Part shown: positions 7,164-51,034 of the stretch, in pieces | Layout of the letters: each line of letters opens with the position of its first letter | Numbering within the stretch: position 1 is the stretch's first letter | IMG/VR virus record: IMGVR_UViG_3300038463_000730 | Span: 1-64,000 of that record | DNA length: 64,000 bases | Direction: 5' to 3' (one strand) | Notes under the pieces: model-generated | Seen by the model: the letters and a program-made list of their open reading frames with translations, nothing else | The model's database searches: none | What the model was told of the DNA's origin: nothing | Program-made: the position numbers and the translations under genes

Positions 7164-7330
7164 GATTATCTCCTTCGCTTAGGCTTCCAGCCAGGCCGGA
7201 GGCCGCTGAAAGATGCCACCTAGCCACGGGCTCGGTTCCCGGCTAACCACTACACCACGGTGCCGTTAGCTGAGCATTCGTGGTAGTGTATTTACCGTTT
7301 TAGGCTAGGTGACATCTTGCAACGAACGTT

Positions 7331-14800: not shown

Positions 14801-14940
14801 AGCCCCTTGTCGGACTCGAACCGACATGATCTAATCCCACCAGAGTGCTCTGGAGCACCGAGGCTCTCGCCTTCGTTGCTTGTAGATTCGATCTCCCCCG
14901 TCTAGCACTCGACGGGTTGCCCGCCAACCGGGCAAGGGGC
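14801..14940 (-). ncRNA. tRNA-like RNA (acceptor stem plus T-arm, non-canonical 116-nt core)
   Basis: GCCCCTT...GTCGG-TTCGAGT-CCGAC-AAGGGGC-T; perfect 7-bp acceptor, no canonical anticodon arm, no CCA. Confidence 0.65.
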
Positions 14941-16186: not shown

Positions 16187-16744
16187 ATGAAAGATTACGA
16201 TACCTGTCCAGGTTGCCGTGGAACGAAACGTAAAGTAGCGAAGCTATGTCGCCCTTGCCGCTACCCAGTCGGTAAAACTAAAGTATGCAAAGGCCCCTGC
16301 GGTCTCGACTTGCCTATTACGGCATTTCGTATCCGAACAAGGAAGACGCCAAAGCCTCGCTCACGTTGTATGGGATGTGAAAGTAAGGCAGAACGCAAGC
16401 GTTACAATGCCAGACCTATTGCAACCCGCAAGGTATCCACTCGCCGATGGGAGAAGAACAACCCAGAGAAGCATAAGGCGCAACTGCTACGCGCTCGGGT
16501 TCGCAAGCTCGGGTTAGCTTCTGATATGGATAGGATCATTGCGTTTGCCGCGCAGTATTCCGCCTGTCCATTGTGCGGCACTACTAAGAGTGACTTGGCT
16601 GGTTCTCGCATGTGCATTGACCACGACCACAAGACCGGCAAGTTTCGTGGTCTTATCTGCGAAGCATGTAACTTTGGCATCGGCCAATGCAAAGATAGCC
16701 CGGCAACATTACGTGCTGCGGCAGACTATCTCGAATCAGCCTAA
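16187..16744 (+). CDS. recombination endonuclease VII-like homing endonuclease
   Basis: CPLC...IDHDHKTGKFRGLICEACNFGIG...D...LRAAADYL; antisense to block. Confidence 0.9.
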   Translation: MKDYDTCPGCRGTKRKVAKLCRPCRYPVGKTKVCKGPCGLDLPITAFRIRTRKTPKPRSRCMGCESKAERKRYNARPIATRKVSTRRWEKNNPEKHKAQLLRARVRKLGLASDMDRIIAFAAQYSACPLCGTTKSDLAGSRMCIDHDHKTGKFRGLICEACNFGIGQCKDSPATLRAAADYLESA

Positions 16745-18355: not shown

Positions 18356-18455
18356 TGGTGCCCGCCCAGGGGATCGAACCCCGGCATACTCCCGACCTTG
18401 TACTTCGGTAAGGGTACTTCCCAACCTATCCTACTCTACCTTCACCTGGCCAGGC
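18356..18455 (-). ncRNA. tRNA-like RNA with encoded CCA
   Basis: GCCTGGC...CGGGG-TTCGATC-CCCTG-GGCGGGC-A-CCA; interior is not a cloverleaf. Confidence 0.6.
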
Positions 18456-20654: not shown

Positions 20655-21092
20655 TCAGTGAACCTCCTCAGTCGTTTCGATCTTCGTCTCTTCCTTCTTG
20701 GGCCAGCCGAATGCCACCTCCTCGATGTGAAGCCGGAAGTCCTCGTCCCACGAATGGCGAACGAGCGGCTCGATGTCGCCGAGGATCTTGATCAATCGGG
20801 CCTCCTCCTCATCCCGGAGCACGTGCCAGGCATCCGTCGCCCGACGATACTGCTCGCGCACAACATTGTGCGCCTCCTCTTCCGGTGACTCGGGGCGAGG
20901 GTTGGACTTGTACCACTCCTCGATCATCGCGTTCAGTGCATCACGCTTGCCGATTTCTCGACCGAGCCGCACGTACTCATGATCGCGGAAGTTCTCCGCG
21001 TCACGCTCTTCCTCGAACGCACGAAGCGTCTTCTCGAAACGATCGCAGCAACGACAACCCGAAACGAACGTAACAACGTGAATCGTCTTCAT
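20655..21092 (-). CDS. hypothetical protein
   Basis: 145 aa ORF; GGAG RBS. Confidence 0.7.
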   Translation of the reverse strand: MKTIHVVTFVSGCRCCDRFEKTLRAFEEERDAENFRDHEYVRLGREIGKRDALNAMIEEWYKSNPRPESPEEEAHNVVREQYRRATDAWHVLRDEEEARLIKILGDIEPLVRHSWDEDFRLHIEEVAFGWPKKEETKIETTEEVH

Positions 21093-21126
21093 GGTTGCAC
21101 TCCTGCGGGTTAGAGTAACTCGATAT

Positions 21127-21186
21127 GATTCGCAGGCGGGGACTTATTGACTTGGCCCTCTTACCTATGTATCGACTCTGCGAATC
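21127..21186 (-). promoter_or_regulatory. structured RNA motif, copy 2
   Basis: Stem GATTCGCAG/CTGCGAATC enclosing GGTAA...GTCAATAAGTCCC. Confidence 0.5.
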
Positions 21187-21193
21187 CCATTAG

Positions 21194-21235
21194 AGCGCGC
21201 CGGGGGAATCGAACCCCCGTATACCATAGCGCGCT
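21194..21235 (-). ncRNA. 42-nt tRNA minihelix-like element
   Basis: AGCGCGC-TATGGTATA-CGGGGG-TTCGATT-CCCCCG-GCGCGCT-C. Confidence 0.6.
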
Positions 21236-21246
21236 TGGCCGTATTA

Positions 21247-21696
21247 CTACGCGGCCTTCGTGATCGCTTCGAGACTCTTCTTCGCGTTCGCCACGAACGA
21301 CTTACCCATCGGCGTCTCCAGCACCGATCCGTACACGGCGAGGTAATCCTCGGCGAGCTTGAGGTAGTACCCGCTGAGCGGCGCACCCTCGACCGCATCG
21401 ATCCAACGCACCGGACCCTTGCCGCCGCGCCCCTTGGACTTGAACCCCTCCTTGCCGGTGAGCTTGTCCAGCGCCGAGTTGATTCGCCACGAAGTCACGG
21501 CGAGGAAGGTCTTGGACTTCACCCCGTTCGCATCGGCCTTCTGCGGAACGAGGCCCGACGCCATCATTCCGGCGAGCGCGGTGAACAGGATCTCCGTCGT
21601 CGTGAATACACGCGGTCCCGGCTTCGGAGCCGCAACCTTGGCAGGCGTGGTGTTGGTCTTGATCGAAATCGCAGCGAGAACCTTGTTCGTGTGCAT
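21247..21696 (-). CDS. hypothetical basic protein
   Basis: 149 aa from MHTNKVL; GGAG RBS. Confidence 0.7.
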   Translation of the reverse strand: MHTNKVLAAISIKTNTTPAKVAAPKPGPRVFTTTEILFTALAGMMASGLVPQKADANGVKSKTFLAVTSWRINSALDKLTGKEGFKSKGRGGKGPVRWIDAVEGAPLSGYYLKLAEDYLAVYGSVLETPMGKSFVANAKKSLEAITKAA

Positions 21697-21750
21697 GACT
21701 TGTTTCTCTCCTGGTTTGAGTAACCGTAACTCGCAACTACCGGCCCTCCA

Positions 21751-21765
21751 CAATGGAATGGAGCC
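21751..21765 (-). promoter_or_regulatory. 15-nt motif copy 2
   Basis: Exact CAATGGAATGGAGCC on plus strand. Confidence 0.7.
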
Positions 21766-21847
21766 GCTTGTGACATTGGATCGCACGACTGGATTCGATC
21801 CGTAGGAACATAGTCGCGTTGACTACTTCCGTCGTGCGAAGACTTGC

Positions 21848-22648: not shown

Positions 22649-22673
22649 TCGCGTCACCTCCGTTGTTGTTTCG

Positions 22674-22688
22674 CAATGGAATGGAGCC
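22674..22688 (-). promoter_or_regulatory. 15-nt motif copy 3
   Basis: Exact repeat. Confidence 0.7.
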
Positions 22689-22689
22689 A

Positions 22690-23955
22690 ATTGCTTAAGT
22701 TGCGAGTTTCCTCACATTCAAACCCACGTATCTAACACGGAGTCGTCATCATCGAACGGTAACTCCCATACTACAGCAATCAAGCGTAGATATGTTGTGT
22801 AGCAGATTCGTAGGCTTGAATGCGAAGGCCAGGGTTCTCACCGTATGGTTTAGCCGATACAGGAAAACCCTGGCTTCGCAAGTTTATGCTTAGAGACCAA
22901 CCTACCAACTAACCCGCTCGGTTCACATACACTTTACCCCATATGACACTGATAGGCGTCCGGCATTGCTCGCCGATGACTCTCTCCTACCTATGGCCGT
23001 GTTGAGATTACCACTAGACCTAGACGCCTGGCATTATCCCGCCAATGGCTTTCTTCTCGGTTTCGTGATCCGATGCACACATTCAAGTGTGACACTGGTA
23101 TCTAGTAACACGATGCAACCCGTAACAGCGAATTAGTAACTCACGTATCACCCGGCACAACCCACTAGGCTTGCGTACCTACTTCCTTTCACACGGCGTT
23201 TTTACACGCCTCACCATGTATGTAGCCTTTCGGCATCACGGCGAGTTTTCATGTTACTCGCTTTCGGCCCCTACACACTTACCCGGTCAACGATTCCAAT
23301 TCACGCTCAACCTACACACCAGGCCAAGGCCAAGTTTTCAGCTAATCATGTTTCGGTTTCTCGCGGGTTAGCATGTAGCTTTGCGCGCCCCTAGCAGATT
23401 GCGAAGACAATACGCTTTCGGTACGGCGCTTCGCATACGAAGAGCTATCTCCTGTCCCTTAGCGATACGGCTTACAAGGCCATACGGTATACCCCAATGT
23501 CAAAGGCGCCCGGTACTAACTCACCGATAGCTTTCTCCTTTGACCTTTCGGTCACTCCGCACCCTCTAACACTGGACTAGTCGCGACCCCTTGGCATCGC
23601 AACCCTATCCCGTAGAGTGAGAGTCATGGTTACTGTCCCTTTCGGAACGCCAACTAGTTAGCTGGCCCGACCTACTCGTTTCGGATATACTATCTCGCCT
23701 ACTCTAGGGAGACAGTCTCTCCGTTTCTTATAGTCGTCCTACTTGCAACGGGTTCCCATTCCCGATGCGTTCAGCATTAGCCCACCTCTCCCGTCAAGGA
23801 GCGAGGTCATATGATGGGCGCCACGTTATGCCCTAGAGGCTAGACTTACTCCGAGGACCCCGTAGGGTAGGCATACCGCCCGGAGGGAACTAGCCACCCT
23901 ACCAGCGAGCGGCTGATAGGTGGGTCGTGGGAGTCGGATTCGGCTCCACCCACTG
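22690..23955 (-). ncRNA. candidate giant structured ncRNA (~1.3 kb)
   Basis: ORF-free; many minus-strand GAAA/GNRA hairpins (23225, 23541, 23410s) and long stem at 22822-22879. Confidence 0.65.
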
Positions 23956-23959
23956 CAAG

Positions 23960-23974
23960 CAATGGAATGGAGCC
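23960..23974 (-). promoter_or_regulatory. 15-nt motif copy 4
   Basis: Exact repeat. Confidence 0.7.
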
Positions 23975-24059
23975 TAGTCATCTCGCGGAACCGAATCGCG
24001 AGACCGCGGCAACCCCGCTTTTCAGCGGGGCGGCATCGCTGCGGCTCAAACCCGGACCA

Positions 24060-24074
24060 CAATGGAATGGAGCC
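24060..24074 (-). promoter_or_regulatory. 15-nt motif copy 5
   Basis: Exact repeat; preceded on minus strand by palindrome GAGCCTACCGATCGGTAGGCTC. Confidence 0.7.
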
Positions 24075-24124
24075 TACCGATCGGTAGGCTCTGATTCTTG
24101 TGAGAGTAGATCGCGCGCCCGCGT

Positions 24125-24351
24125 TGCACGTACCATGCCAGCCCAATTTGACGCGAGACAGCAATGAGACGACGCGCTGCGTTATGGCATGTTTCGAGCT
24201 ATATAATGCATAAAAGATACCTACAATGTCTTTACAATAACATTGTAATTGATCTGGTATGATCTAAGCTATATATTGCACGGAACATACCAATCATACT
24301 CCAGGCCTGGCACGGAACTTGCCTGCCACCCGCCGCTGGCACGAATCTTGC
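24125..24351. promoter_or_regulatory. cluster of sigma54 (-24/-12)-like sites, both strands
   Basis: TGGCACG-N4-TTGC exact at 24308 and 24337 (+); GG-N10-GC variants at 24185 and 24255 (+), 24125 and 24277 (-). Confidence 0.6.
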
Positions 24352-40284: not shown

Positions 40285-40619
40285 GAACGAAGATTCAGAT
40301 TGAACTGGAGACGTTAGCCCGAGCCATGAGTAAACGTTTTCTACACAAATTCTGGGGCAAAGAATACATCGGCTTAATCAAACGAGTCAAAGGGTACTGT
40401 AGTCACTGCGGCATTCAAATTCTATTGGTCAAAGGAAAGGGTGCCGAGCATTCGTTATTCCTTGGGACACGACACTTTCGCGTGGGCAATGAGCGGTTCG
40501 CTTCATCCGGAACTTATCCTAGCTTGATCGTTTCAAAAATGCTGATCATGCCATCAGATCCGATATCGAGAGAATTGCTTCTTGAGCACGGCTGTAAAAA
40601 GTTCGTAGCTTTACTATGA
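40281..40619 (+). CDS. family A paralogue
   Basis: RFLH...CSHC...CKKFVALL-stop. Confidence 0.75.
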   Translation: MRTKIQIELETLARAMSKRFLHKFWGKEYIGLIKRVKGYCSHCGIQILLVKGKGAEHSLFLGTRHFRVGNERFASSGTYPSLIVSKMLIMPSDPISRELLLEHGCKKFVALL

Positions 40620-40634
40620 CGAGAGATCCGGGTC

Positions 40635-40991
40635 ATGACAGCTGTAATTGGAATGGCGGAATTGAACCTGGAAACAAAGCAAACATTTGAGGAGCTGGTC
40701 CAGATTGCCCGTCCCTACGTTCGTAAATTAGGCCACACGATTGGCGAGTGGGAGCTTGGGCCTCGACCTCACATCAGCTTCCACATCTTCACAATTTGCA
40801 AAGCGTGCAAGAAGAAAATCAAATGCCAGAAGTGCCTTGTCGTTGGGACTGAAGACGAGATCACGTATCGCTGGGAGATTATCGTTGGTAACTACATAAG
40901 TGTCTCGTTGAGCCGTGAAGCCGAACTAGTCGAAAACATTAAAGACACGTGGGAACGATGTCTCTGTACTAGACTATCGGTGATGCTGTAA
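40635..40991 (+). CDS. family A paralogue
   Basis: KLGH...CKAC...CTRLSVML-stop. Confidence 0.8.
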   Translation: MTAVIGMAELNLETKQTFEELVQIARPYVRKLGHTIGEWELGPRPHISFHIFTICKACKKKIKCQKCLVVGTEDEITYRWEIIVGNYISVSLSREAELVENIKDTWERCLCTRLSVML

Positions 40992-40992
40992 C

Positions 40993-41319
40993 ATGAAATA
41001 TCTTACGGAAGATAAACTACAGGTCATCCACACTGGCCTCCGAAAGATGGGACATCGCATCGATTGGAAATCTCCAGATGAACCGGTGTTCAATCTAAAT
41101 GGGGAACTGATCCTGGTCGGAACATGCCAGAATTGTCATCAACTGCTTGAATGTTTTTATTCTGGAATGAGTTCGGTCTGTAACGTCTACGTTGACAAGG
41201 TTCGAACGATATACATTTCGAAAAAGGGTGACGTTCGAATAAGTGGGATGAATGGGATGAAATATTACCCCGTGAGTTACGGCTCGATTCAATGCCCGAA
41301 GCTTGTTGTCATGCTTTAG
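40993..41319 (+). CDS. family A paralogue
   Basis: KMGH...CQNC...CPKLVVML-stop. Confidence 0.8.
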   Translation: MKYLTEDKLQVIHTGLRKMGHRIDWKSPDEPVFNLNGELILVGTCQNCHQLLECFYSGMSSVCNVYVDKVRTIYISKKGDVRISGMNGMKYYPVSYGSIQCPKLVVML

Positions 41320-44194: not shown

Positions 44195-45256
44195 ATGCTC
44201 AGTGCATTCATCTTGAGCAATCGACGTGAAATCATTGCAAATTCGTGTAGAACGATCGCATTGAGATCTGGTTTGATTCCAGACGAAACTCCTGCCGCAG
44301 TGCCGGTATTCCTGAATTTTTTTCTCAGCCAATTGGTCAATATTCTTTCGTATTCGTGTCCTGATGACGGAATGAAACGAACGGCTGCCATCCACGGCGG
44401 CTCGATGCTGGGTCTCGGTTATTCCGTTTCACATGTCGTCCACGACTATGGAGACATTGGTAAGGCTATTATCTGTTTGGCTTTGAAATGTGAAATAGTC
44501 TTCACTGTCCAAGACTTTTACCAGCTATGTCGATGCATCGATTCAGCAGTTTCGGCAGCCGTTACAGAATACGAACGTCTTCGAGACCAGAACGTTGCTC
44601 GGGCCGAGACAGAGCGCATCGGTATATTCGCCCACGAATTACGAAACAAGATGAGTGCCGCAACACTCGCCTACCAATCCATCGTTTCGGGACGCTCACC
44701 TGTTAAAGGCGGAGTCTCGGCAGTCGTTACAAGGAACCTGATCAACGTTAATGATCTGATCGAACGAGAAATCAATCAGGTTCGAGTTGACTCGGGGAAT
44801 TGTCACCAGAAACGAATCCATCTTTACCAGTTTATGGAAGAAGCCGGATCGGATGGAATGGTTTCGGCAAATGCTCGCGGTATCTCGCTTAAGGTAAGCC
44901 CGACTCCACGCGAGATCGACATCGACGTCGATCAACAGATTCTTGCTGGAGCTGTTTCGAATCTATTGCAGAATGCATTCAAATTCACACCTCAAGGCGG
45001 ACAAGTGCTGCTGCGTACGTCTGTCTTGGACCACCGCGTTTTGATCGATGTGGCGGATGAATGCGGCGGTTTGCCAATTGGCAAGAATGAGGAATTGTTT
45101 CGAGCGTTCGAGCAACGCGGAACGAATCGCTCCGGACTCGGGCTCGGATTGTTCATCAGCCGAAAAGGCGTTGAGGCTAATAATGGCTCGATCCATGTTC
45201 AAGACATTCCCGGATCAGGATGCGTTTTCACGATCGATTTGCCATTGGCTTCGTAG
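44195..45256 (+). CDS. orphan cytoplasmic sensor histidine kinase
   Basis: H-box FAHELRN, N-box NLLQNAFKFT, DECGG, F-box LFRAF, GLGLGL, G2 GSG; no TM segments. Confidence 0.9.
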   Translation: MLSAFILSNRREIIANSCRTIALRSGLIPDETPAAVPVFLNFFLSQLVNILSYSCPDDGMKRTAAIHGGSMLGLGYSVSHVVHDYGDIGKAIICLALKCEIVFTVQDFYQLCRCIDSAVSAAVTEYERLRDQNVARAETERIGIFAHELRNKMSAATLAYQSIVSGRSPVKGGVSAVVTRNLINVNDLIEREINQVRVDSGNCHQKRIHLYQFMEEAGSDGMVSANARGISLKVSPTPREIDIDVDQQILAGAVSNLLQNAFKFTPQGGQVLLRTSVLDHRVLIDVADECGGLPIGKNEELFRAFEQRGTNRSGLGLGLFISRKGVEANNGSIHVQDIPGSGCVFTIDLPLAS

Positions 45257-50602: not shown

Positions 50603-51034
50603 TTGACGATCGAACCGGATCTCGTCAAGTTCTCGTTAGACTGGCTGCCAATAAAATCGAATCGATATATGCTAAAAGTTTCTGTTATGCTAGACGTATG
50701 GGAAAAGATGCTCTCCAAAGCCCAGATGCCATCTGCTCAATCTGGAGACATTGAAGATGTCCTAAAATCTTCTGGGCTATTCGATGTAGCCCAGCAGGTA
50801 TCTCCATTACTGGATCAGGCTGGGGTTCCTGGAAACGCATCGGTTGAAATCGGATTAACAATAGATCGTGGTCTTAACCCGAGTTTTCCCGTTATAACAA
50901 ATCCTCCGAGCCCGACAGCCAGGGCATTATCCGGGCTGCTAAAACAGCACTTTGCGGGTCCGATCAAGAAAGCGTTAACAAACGCTAAACTGAACGTAAC
51001 GGATACGGTCAGCCTAAAATGGCTGAAGTTCTGA
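50603..51034 (+). CDS. hypothetical protein
   Basis: 143 aa ORF, start uncertain. Confidence 0.55.
   Translation: MTIEPDLVKFSLDWLPIKSNRYMLKVSVMLDVWEKMLSKAQMPSAQSGDIEDVLKSSGLFDVAQQVSPLLDQAGVPGNASVEIGLTIDRGLNPSFPVITNPPSPTARALSGLLKQHFAGPIKKALTNAKLNVTDTVSLKWLKF

What the first reader, a model, noticed from the sequence alone, without database searches (positions are those of the whole stretch)
21194..21235. A 42-nt tRNA 'minihelix': acceptor stem plus T-arm joined by a D-loop-like linker
Seen (minus strand): AGCGCGC / TATGGTATA / CGGGGG-TTCGATT-CCCCCG / GCGCGCT / C. It has a perfect 7-bp acceptor stem, a canonical T-loop, and a 9-nt linker containing the D-loop-like TGGTA, with no anticodon arm. 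It sits 11 nt after a stop codon and just before a structured motif. Established: RNase P, RNase Z and CCA-adding enzyme recognise the acceptor/T-arm elbow. Inference: an mRNA-processing signal in the polycistron (mascRNA-like) or a decoy for tRNA-directed host enzymes.
Basis: partly seen in the sequence, partly recalled or inferred. Interest (0 to 1): 0.68.

Follow-up and report, generated by a model that had tools for sequence, protein, structure and literature searches.

The report
Phage tRNA-like minihelix between genes
The 42-nt element is real and belongs to a large, apparently undescribed family of anticodon-less tRNA look-alikes that sit just after stop codons between small phage genes, most likely as cutting signals for the host's tRNA-trimming enzymes.

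Summary
It is not an isolated curiosity. Pattern scans and covariance models show that the window element belongs to a family with more than 180 copies. Carriers include uncultivated phage contigs, Mycobacterium phages Indlulamithi (11 unannotated copies), Fowlmouth, MrMiyagi and Cuke, Corynebacterium phage PSonyx, and prophage regions of Bacteroidota, Clostridia and other bacteria.

All members share four things: a 12-position stack of acceptor and T stems, a canonical T-loop, a short stemless linker with an invariant GG (D-loop-like A-A-Y-G-G-U), and a tRNA-type 3' tail (A73 in 86%, C74 in 94%). Both stems covary strongly: 364 double-change cells against 80 expected, and 92.6% paired against 36-54% in shifted controls. 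A model trained only on Indlulamithi copies finds the window element at 34 bits (E about 1e-6).

Three quarters of copies start within -8 to +15 nt of a same-strand stop codon, and the next gene starts a median 32 nt downstream. No Rfam family, ARAGORN call or paper found here covers them.

The best reading is an intercistronic substrate for RNase P and 3' tRNA maturation, which would cut the operon transcript and release a roughly 44-nt tRNA-like RNA. Processing itself is inferred, because no RNA data exist for this locus.

The parts
21247..21786 (-). Upstream orphan ORF (179 aa by longest ORF; 149 aa in the JGI call). Its stop is TAG 21249-21247, followed by TAA.
   Evidence: no Pfam or PHROG hit (22, 25); only self-hits among 5.8 billion proteins (30)
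21235..21235 (-). N(-1), an A. It can pair with T21194 and so extend the helix to 13 bp.
21229..21234 (-). 5' acceptor-like strand GCGCGC (G+1 = 21234)
21220..21228 (-). Stemless linker UAUGGUAUA. The GG at 21225-21224 corresponds to the family-invariant GG (D-loop G18 G19 analogue).
21201..21219 (-). T-arm: 6-bp stem CGGGGG/CCCCCG and loop UUCGAUU (21213-21207)
21195..21200 (-). 3' acceptor-like strand GCGCGC
21193..21194 (-). Discriminator position U73 (21194) and C74 (21193). The tail reads U-C-U-A.
21127..21186 (-). Second hairpin, closed by a 9-bp stem GAUUCGCAG/CUGCGAAUC. It corresponds to the small second hairpin that follows the minihelix in Indlulamithi.
   Evidence: not significant on its own
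21100..21104 (-). Shine-Dalgarno-like AGGAG, 7 nt before ATG 21092-21090
20655..21092 (-). Downstream orphan ORF (145 aa)

Best explanation
The element is a transcribed, cis-encoded tRNA mimic. It is one member of a widespread family of phage 'intercistronic minihelices'. The RNA folds into the acceptor/T-arm half of a tRNA, a 12-position coaxial stack capped by a canonical T-loop. A short single-stranded linker carries a GG that probably docks on the T-loop, as D-loop G18-G19 do, forming a tRNA 'elbow'.

That shape, together with G+1 and the N73-C74 tail, is what bacterial RNase P, the 3' tRNA-maturation enzymes (RNase Z or exonucleases) and the CCA-adding enzyme read. Those enzymes would therefore cut the polycistronic early transcript on both sides of the element. 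This would separate the upstream and downstream cistrons and release a tRNA-like RNA of about 44 nt, which could receive CCA. The hairpin that follows would then sit at the new 5' end of the downstream mRNA.

Shown here: the structure, its conservation and covariation, the tRNA-type end rules, and the gene-boundary placement. Inferred: transcription of this copy, cleavage by RNase P or RNase Z, CCA addition, and any effect on gene expression.
For: (1) Family. The same stems with a different linker occur in an unrelated phage contig (L037). Nine or more further contigs and PSonyx carry short-linker homologues with covarying stems.

(2) Covariation. In A6, 10 of 12 pairs show double changes. Indlulamithi alone gives 10 of 12 pairs and a score of 0.81 against 0.19 for shuffles. 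Across 117 distinct sequences, 92.6% of cells are paired against 36-54% in slid controls, with 364 double-change cells against 80 expected and 0 of 500 shuffles as high.

(3) Independent membership. The Indlulamithi-only model R3 scores the window element at 34.0 bits, E = 1.3e-6 in the window and 8.7e-6 in the 434-kb record. The record's real tRNAs score 16 bits or less.

(4) tRNA-specific features a plain hairpin does not need. The linker GG is invariant, and G53 T54 T55 C56 A58 C61 are conserved. The stack is 12 positions in 16 of 26 parsed members. A73 is present in 86% and C74 in 94%, C75 is depleted, and the commonest tail is ACAA. The megaphage's own CCA-less tRNA genes show the same tail pattern, with C74 in 22 of the 23 tRNA genes the scan recovered. 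Encoded CCA follows the discriminator in both L037 copies, PSonyx copy 2 and Indlulamithi copy 6.

(5) Placement. 95 of 126 contexts start within -8 to +15 nt of a same-strand stop, and the next ORF starts a median 32 nt downstream. In Indlulamithi, 11 of the gaps between genes 40 and 57 each hold one copy.

(6) G.U outnumbers A.C 19 to 5 at paired columns, which favours RNA on this strand.

(7) Precedents. The tRNA-like module of M. smegmatis YrlA is cut by RNase P and gains CA in vivo (PMC4201824). The RNase P consensus is a 12-bp stem, a T-loop and RCCA (PMC10731613).

(8) The megaphage encodes a CCA-adding-type nucleotidyltransferase.
Against: No RNA data exist for this locus: all 11 runs holding it are DNA, so neither transcription nor cleavage is shown.

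In the window copy A(-1) can pair with U73. Leader-to-3'-end pairing is a known anti-determinant for RNase P.

About a third of copies start 0-2 nt after the stop codon, or even share its last base (PSonyx, L060). A 5' cut there would leave the upstream mRNA almost without a 3' UTR, which looks costly.

The megaphage has only this one copy, so 'punctuation' is not systematic in this genome.

The window copy deviates from the family: its linker is UAUGGUAUA rather than AAYGGUUUU, its discriminator is U, and it lies 101 nt from the next start.
Confidence: 0.5

Rival explanations
1. The main product is the released minihelix itself, acting in trans. It would be a CCA-tailed, perhaps aminoacylated, small RNA that titrates or misdirects proteins that read the acceptor/T-arm half of tRNA. 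Candidates include acceptor-end-modifying defence toxins, the CCA-adding enzyme, synthetases and EF-Tu. The gene-boundary position would then simply be where such genes fit.
For: CCA is encoded in four members. Discriminator, C74 and G+1 rules are conserved. In Indlulamithi the 11 copies have 11 different acceptor stems, like a set of tRNA species. One PSonyx copy lies next to an RtcB-like RNA ligase gene. The window, L037a and L037b share the acceptor GCGCGC although their T-arms or linkers differ. G1-C72, C2-G71, G3-C70 with U73 is the bacterial tRNA-Gly acceptor identity set (own knowledge).
Against: The elements lack an anticodon arm, so they cannot decoy anticodon nucleases, the commonest tRNA-directed defences. 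The tight and asymmetric placement after stops and before starts, copy after copy, is better explained by a cis role. In the Chryseobacterium prophage the four copies are nearly identical, which does not add decoy diversity. No binding or charging data exist.
Confidence: 0.2
2. The element is an mRNA 3'-end structure. It would protect the upstream mRNA from 3' exonucleases, or pause or terminate transcription, without any tRNA enzyme being involved. This would resemble REP elements or the U-tract-less hairpin terminators of actinobacteria.
For: It is a very stable GC-rich hairpin right after a stop codon. L052 and L059 carry an identical T-loop-capped hairpin after each of 11 ORFs.
Against: No U tract follows: the family tail is A-rich (ACAA) and no terminator consensus was called at the site. 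A protective hairpin does not need a T-loop consensus, an invariant GG in a one-sided linker, a 12-position stack or an A73-C74 tail.
Confidence: 0.12
3. It is a DNA-level site. One version is an attP-type copy of a host tRNA 3' end. The other is a folded single-strand recombination site flanking gene cassettes, as integron attC sites do.
For: T-arm plus 3' acceptor copies do mark att cores in other phages: cluster-P mycobacteriophage repressor genes and tRNA-Thr att duplicates at provirus ends. Arrays of small same-strand orphan ORFs, each followed by a structured element, resemble cassette arrays.
Against: The exact 3' half is absent from 185,579 species genomes. The tRNA-Leu genes from metagenomes that share most of it have discriminator A and a different loop base. 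A complementary 5' strand is present, which att cores lack. No integrase is adjacent. G.U exceeds A.C 19 to 5, and the conserved unpaired bases are tRNA-specific rather than attC-like.
Confidence: 0.05
4. It is a decayed tRNA gene that lost its D stem and anticodon arm by deletion, or a chance hairpin, with no function.
For: The acceptor and T-arm are almost those of soil-bacterial tRNA-Leu(UAG) genes, several of which have GGTATAC in the D-loop, as the window linker does. The megaphage has other odd tRNA-like elements. The chance expectation is about 0.1 per record.
Against: The same architecture recurs more than 180 times with compensatory changes and conserved single-stranded bases. The locus is identical in nine metagenomic data sets. 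An independent model recognises it. Keeping the D-loop while losing the D stem would need two separate deletions.
Confidence: 0.04

Closest known systems
Synthetic acceptor-T-arm 'minihelix' substrates of RNase P, CCA-adding enzyme and some aminoacyl-tRNA synthetases (own knowledge; minihelix-derived RNase P substrates are mentioned in PMC10731613)
   Same: Same half of the tRNA: 7 + 5 stacked pairs, a T-loop and a discriminator.
   Different: Those are laboratory constructs without a linker. Here the element is genome-encoded, carries a conserved GG-containing linker between the 5' strand and the T stem, and sits between genes.
Plant mitochondrial t-elements and the mitochondrial tRNA-punctuation model (own knowledge; model cited in PMC8601606)
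   Same: tRNA or tRNA-like structures between or beside mRNAs, used by RNase P and RNase Z to define mRNA ends.
   Different: Those are organellar and are mostly full tRNAs or loosely tRNA-like. No sequence relationship exists, and nothing equivalent has been described for phages in the literature searched.
mascRNA/menRNA at the 3' ends of MALAT1 and MEN-beta (Rfam RF01684)
   Same: A tRNA-like module inside a longer transcript whose excision by RNase P and RNase Z creates the ends of both RNAs; CCA is added to the small RNA.
   Different: It is eukaryotic and a cloverleaf with an anticodon-like arm. The Rfam model scores only 23 bits against a gathering score of 42.5 on one family member.
tRNA-like domain of tmRNA (Rfam RF00023)
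   Same: Acceptor stem plus T-arm with a stemless, GG-containing D-loop analogue and no anticodon arm. The long-linker copy in Indlulamithi aligns to it at 25.6 bits.
   Different: The score is below gathering (47). There is no mRNA-like domain, no pseudoknots, no G3:U70 alanine identity, and ARAGORN makes no tmRNA call.
Bacterial Y RNA YrlA tRNA-like module (PMC4201824)
   Same: A bacterial and phage-encoded tRNA mimic. In M. smegmatis it is cut by RNase P and gains CA onto an encoded C, which matches the family's conserved C74.
   Different: YrlA has a Ro60-binding stem, a D stem-loop and permuted arms, and lies next to rsr. None of these features is seen here, and there is no Rfam hit.
PeSL cassettes of T4-type phages and REP elements of enterobacteria (own knowledge)
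   Same: Repeated stem-loop elements at the boundaries of small genes in plastic phage regions or after stop codons.
   Different: Those are plain hairpins, with a promoter in the case of PeSL. They have no T-loop, no GG linker and no tRNA end rules.

Membership tests
Phage intercistronic tRNA-like minihelix (family defined here) | Two coaxial helices totalling about 12 positions, with the 3' strands contiguous | tested here: met
   The window has 6 + 6 pairs. The family mode is 12. Both helices covary.
Phage intercistronic tRNA-like minihelix (family defined here) | Canonical T-loop closed by G-C pairs (GGUUCGAUUCC) | tested here: met
   The window matches 11 of 11. The motif is invariant in the family.
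Phage intercistronic tRNA-like minihelix (family defined here) | Short stemless linker on the 5' side with an invariant GG three nucleotides after the 5' strand | tested here: met
   The window has UAU-GG-UAUA. GG is present in 16 of 16, and the second G in 117 of 117. The window linker otherwise departs from the AAYGGUUUU consensus.
Phage intercistronic tRNA-like minihelix (family defined here) | tRNA-type tail: discriminator followed by C74 | tested here: met
   The window has U73-C74. In the family C74 is 94% and A73 86%, so the window discriminator is a minority type.
Phage intercistronic tRNA-like minihelix (family defined here) | Sense-strand position just after a stop codon and before the next gene | tested here: met
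   The window element lies 11 nt after TAG and 101 nt before ATG. The family medians are 8 and 32 nt.
Phage intercistronic tRNA-like minihelix (family defined here) | Recognised by a covariance model that did not include it | tested here: met
   R3 (Indlulamithi only): 34.0 bits, E = 1.3e-6, full length, top hit.
Canonical tRNA (RF00005) | Cloverleaf with D arm and anticodon arm | tested here: not met
   ARAGORN finds no gene in the window. There is no RF00005 hit even at E <= 5. Only 9 nt lie between the 5' strand and the T stem.
tmRNA (RF00023) | tRNA-like domain plus tag-encoding mRNA-like domain and pseudoknots; G3:U70 | tested here: not met
   No hit in the window. Position 3:70 is G-C.
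mascRNA/menRNA (RF01684) | Rfam model above its gathering score | tested here: not met
   No hit in the window. On an Indlulamithi copy it scores 23 bits against 42.5.
YrlA / bacterial Y RNA | Ro60-binding stem and adjacency to rsr | tested here: not met
   No Rfam match. The neighbours are orphans. rsr was not searched for specifically.
Intrinsic terminator | GC-rich hairpin followed by a U tract | tested here: not met
   The tail is CUAAUGGG. No minus-strand terminator was called.
attP core derived from a host tRNA 3' end | Identity to a host tRNA 3' end, and an integrase nearby | tested here: not met
   The exact 24-mer is absent from 185,579 species genomes. No integrase was seen among the neighbours. 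A 5' partner strand is present.
Substrate of RNase P / RNase Z / CCA-adding enzyme | Cleavage at N-1/N+1 and at N73, and CCA addition | not testable with these tools
   No RNA run holds the locus. The sequence features are compatible.

The most novel reading that the evidence does not exclude
Phages of several bacterial phyla run a 'tRNA punctuation' system built from anticodon-less minihelices. Host RNase P and 3' tRNA-maturation enzymes would dice early operon transcripts at these marks. The released CCA-tailed minihelices, each with its own acceptor identity, would additionally be charged or bound by host factors and act as decoys against defence toxins that attack the tRNA acceptor end.
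Probability: 0.15. Interest if true: 0.92.

Novelty: new variant of a known kind. Interest (0 to 1): 0.8.

Why it matters
tRNA mimicry as an RNA-processing signal is known from mitochondria and from MALAT1. I found no description of it as a recurrent, conserved feature of phage operons.

This family is common. It is invisible to tRNA finders and to Rfam, and it is unannotated even in curated SEA-PHAGES genomes.

Practical consequences:
- It would explain many roughly 85-nt 'empty' gaps between small phage genes.
- It would correct gene starts; for example, the annotated start of Indlulamithi gene 53 overlaps a copy.
- It would offer a natural counterpart to the engineered tRNA-gRNA arrays used to release several RNAs from one transcript.
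- It can be tested directly in non-pathogenic laboratory hosts, because cultured carriers exist.

It also raises a question about how small a tRNA fragment can be and still be handled by the tRNA maturation machinery in vivo.

Tried and rejected
- **Relatives through flanking proteins.** The 179-, 145-, 428- and 280-aa neighbours have none in the viral collection. The 179- and 145-aa proteins have only self-hits among 5.8 billion proteins.
- **Megablast of the region against GenBank phages.** No match.
- **Natural variation.** Five assemblies and four further peat runs carry the locus with no difference in the element, so this genome gives no covariation.
- **RNA evidence.** None of the 11 runs holding the locus is RNA, so ends could not be mapped.
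- **Donor or host tRNA.** The exact 3' half is absent from the viral collection and from the genome collection. The metagenome hits are ordinary tRNA-Leu/Val genes with discriminator A, apart from L037.
- **Rfam.** Nothing at gathering thresholds. At permissive thresholds, on the window, the Indlulamithi array and Bacteroidota loci, only sub-threshold tmRNA, mascRNA and antisense Plastid-ycf2 resemblances appear.
- **Promoter and terminator scan.** Nothing at the element.
- **MAFFT alignment of all members.** It put the 5' strands in two registers, so Infernal alignments were used instead.
- **RtcB in the megaphage.** Absent.
- **Literature.** Seven searches found no description.
- **Chance hairpin, decayed tRNA and attP.** Considered and rejected; see the rival explanations.

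Full report
**What is there.** It lies 11 nt after the TAG (then TAA) that ends an orphan ORF, and 101 nt before the ATG of the next orphan ORF on the same strand. Alone it folds into the proposed structure at -23.7 kcal/mol, 64% of the ensemble, z = -3.0. ARAGORN finds no tRNA in the window and Rfam finds nothing at gathering scores. At E <= 5 Rfam reports only an antisense, sub-threshold plastid match.

**The genome.** The window is the first 64 kb of a 434,688-bp IMG/VR record cut from a 503-kb peat-metagenome contig. It is a megaphage with 24 tRNA genes, all on the minus strand, and a CCA-adding-type nucleotidyltransferase. The first 24 kb is richer in G+C. It is a minus-strand array of small orphan genes separated by structured gaps.

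**Is it more than chance?** A scan for a T-arm plus a pairing 7-nt flank recovers the record's tRNAs. The only short-spacer cases it adds are this element and one terminator hairpin. Simulated sequence yields about 0.1 such element per record. That is suggestive but not enough by itself. The locus is also invariant in nine data sets, so the genome offers no covariation.

**Finding relatives.** The flanking proteins have no relatives anywhere, so I searched by the element itself.
- Its 3' half is absent from the viral collection and from 185,579 species genomes.
- A metagenome scan gave 34 ordinary tRNA-Leu/Val loci (one cut at its contig end) and one exception, L037. L037 has the same stems and T-loop but a different 18-nt linker, followed by an encoded CCA. 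It lies 9 nt after a stop and 25 nt before a sliding-clamp gene, in an unrelated phage contig.
- BLAST against GenBank phages exposed a look-alike in Corynebacterium phage PSonyx.
- A scan for the T-arm alone gave ten further viral loci (nine distinct sequences) with short GG-containing linkers and flanking strands that differ in sequence but stay complementary.

**A conserved RNA family.**
- A covariance model built from eight members found copies whose T-stems I had not selected for, including a second CCA-ending copy in L037 and several in L065.
- L065 is Mycobacterium phage Indlulamithi. Its curated annotation has 11 unannotated copies, one in each of 11 gaps between genes 40 and 57. Each copy has its own stem sequences.
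- Covariation is strong. It covers 10 of 12 pairs in the mixed set and 10 of 12 within Indlulamithi alone.
- Over 117 distinct sequences from a signature scan, 92.6% of cells are paired against 36-54% in shifted controls. There are 364 double-change cells against 80 expected.
- The two pairs closing the T-loop are the most conserved (one invariant, the other nearly so), as in tRNA.
- G.U outnumbers A.C 19 to 5, which favours RNA on this strand.
- A model trained only on Indlulamithi recognises the window element full length at 34 bits, E about 1e-6. The megaphage's real tRNAs score 16 bits or less. Membership therefore does not rest on circular evidence.

**tRNA rules beyond the helices.**
- The linker GG is invariant and sits three nucleotides after the 5' strand (A-A-Y-G-G-U, like D-loop positions 14-20).
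- The stack is 12 positions in most members.
- The discriminator is A in 86% and the next base is C in 94%. C75 is depleted and the commonest tail is ACAA.
- That tail is the one seen on the megaphage's own CCA-less tRNA genes.
- Four members encode a full CCA.
- A plain hairpin, a terminator or a DNA palindrome needs none of these features. Together they match what RNase P, 3' tRNA processing and the CCA-adding enzyme read (PMC10731613). In M. smegmatis a tRNA-like module of YrlA is handled in exactly this way in vivo (PMC4201824).

**Placement.**
- 95 of 126 distinct contexts start within -8 to +15 nt of a same-strand stop (median 8 nt). The next ORF starts a median 32 nt downstream.
- In Indlulamithi the order is stop, minihelix, a small second hairpin, a conserved SD box, then the start. 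The window copy has the same order with a larger second hairpin.
- Copies occur in arrays of up to 11 among small orphan early-type genes. One carrier is a Mu-like Chryseobacterium prophage.
- The signature is present in Bacteroidota, Clostridia, Actinomycetota and other genomes.
- None of the 144 hits overlaps an ARAGORN call, and those 700 kb hold only four canonical tRNAs.

**Interpretation.** The most economical reading is a cis-acting tRNA mimic that recruits tRNA end-processing enzymes to gene boundaries. That would cut the operon transcript and release a small tRNA-like RNA.

The cleavage steps are inferred. Four points count against an optimal RNase P site or a systematic role here:
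- A rather than U predominates at N(-1).
- In the window copy A(-1) can pair with U73.
- Many copies abut the stop codon.
- The megaphage has a single copy.

A trans role for the released RNA, as a decoy or regulator, remains open. It would account for the encoded CCA ends and the diversity of acceptor stems. Terminator, att-site, cassette-site and pseudogene readings fit the data poorly.

**Novelty.** No Rfam 15 family matches the window, mycobacteriophage or Bacteroidota versions. Seven literature searches found no description. The nearest known shapes are tmRNA's tRNA-like domain and mascRNA, both below threshold. The nearest known logic is mitochondrial tRNA punctuation and plant t-elements. 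I rate this a new variant of a known kind, of high interest, and directly testable in M. smegmatis and C. glutamicum.

Noticed in passing
window 14802-14940 (-): A 139-nt tRNA-like RNA. It has a perfect 7-bp acceptor, a D-arm-like hairpin with a GG loop, a second hairpin, a branched extra arm of about 65 nt and a canonical T-arm. The fold z-score is -4.2. It ends 20 nt before an ATG and lies in about 1 kb without gene calls. Neither ARAGORN nor Rfam calls it.
   Followed up: partly
window about 18356-18455 (-): A T-arm followed by a 7-nt strand, A, and an encoded CCA. The 5' partner pairs at 6 of 7 positions. It is intergenic, about 40 nt before an ATG, and is not a callable tRNA. The minihelix model scores it weakly (14.6 bits).
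   Followed up: partly
window 7164-7330 (-): A 167-nt intergenic stretch that folds into a long closed structure (z = -4.3) and contains a D-arm-like GUAGUGGUUAGC string. No Rfam match.
   Followed up: partly
window 22649-24231: About 1.6 kb without called genes, at the boundary between the 55-58% GC part and the 45-49% GC part. It is rich in GAAA-type tetraloops. One 300-nt piece has z = -2.05. No Rfam match. It may be a large leader or a non-coding RNA at the head of the minus-strand operon.
   Followed up: partly
G000 record 266-420 kb (outside the window): All 24 ARAGORN tRNAs are on the minus strand. They include a CUA-anticodon suppressor (374731-374804) and three calls with two-base 'anticodons'. 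Further uncalled T-arm-plus-acceptor candidates exist, for example 351509-351597 and 420700-420872, the latter with 142 nt between the 5' strand and the T stem.
   Followed up: no
L052:3400-7200 (-) and L059:5400-8500 (+): Eleven small ORFs are each followed 10-14 nt after the stop by an identical T-loop-capped hairpin, then by exactly 51 nt to the next ATG. This is a repeated intergenic cassette without the GG linker.
   Followed up: partly
L042:1497-1560 (Gordonia phage Octobien14, 57716-57780): An orphan T-arm lies immediately after tRNA-Lys and is followed directly by what looks like the 5' half of a tRNA. It is unannotated and sits inside the tRNA cluster.
   Followed up: no
L071 (Indlulamithi) 40300-40350, 44600-44670 and 40960-41009: One element has an acceptor, a true D arm and a T-arm but no anticodon arm. 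Another is a tRNA-like without a D stem. The annotated start of gene 53 (40980) overlaps a minihelix, so the real start is probably the ATG after the conserved SD box.
   Followed up: no
L075:1019-1068 (PSonyx 50818-50867, -): The second PSonyx minihelix ends in an encoded A-CCA and lies directly upstream of an RtcB-like RNA ligase gene.
   Followed up: partly
window 16370-16744 (+): An Endonuclease_7-family gene on the opposite strand interrupts the minus-strand gene array (JGI call with a Pfam hit).
   Followed up: no
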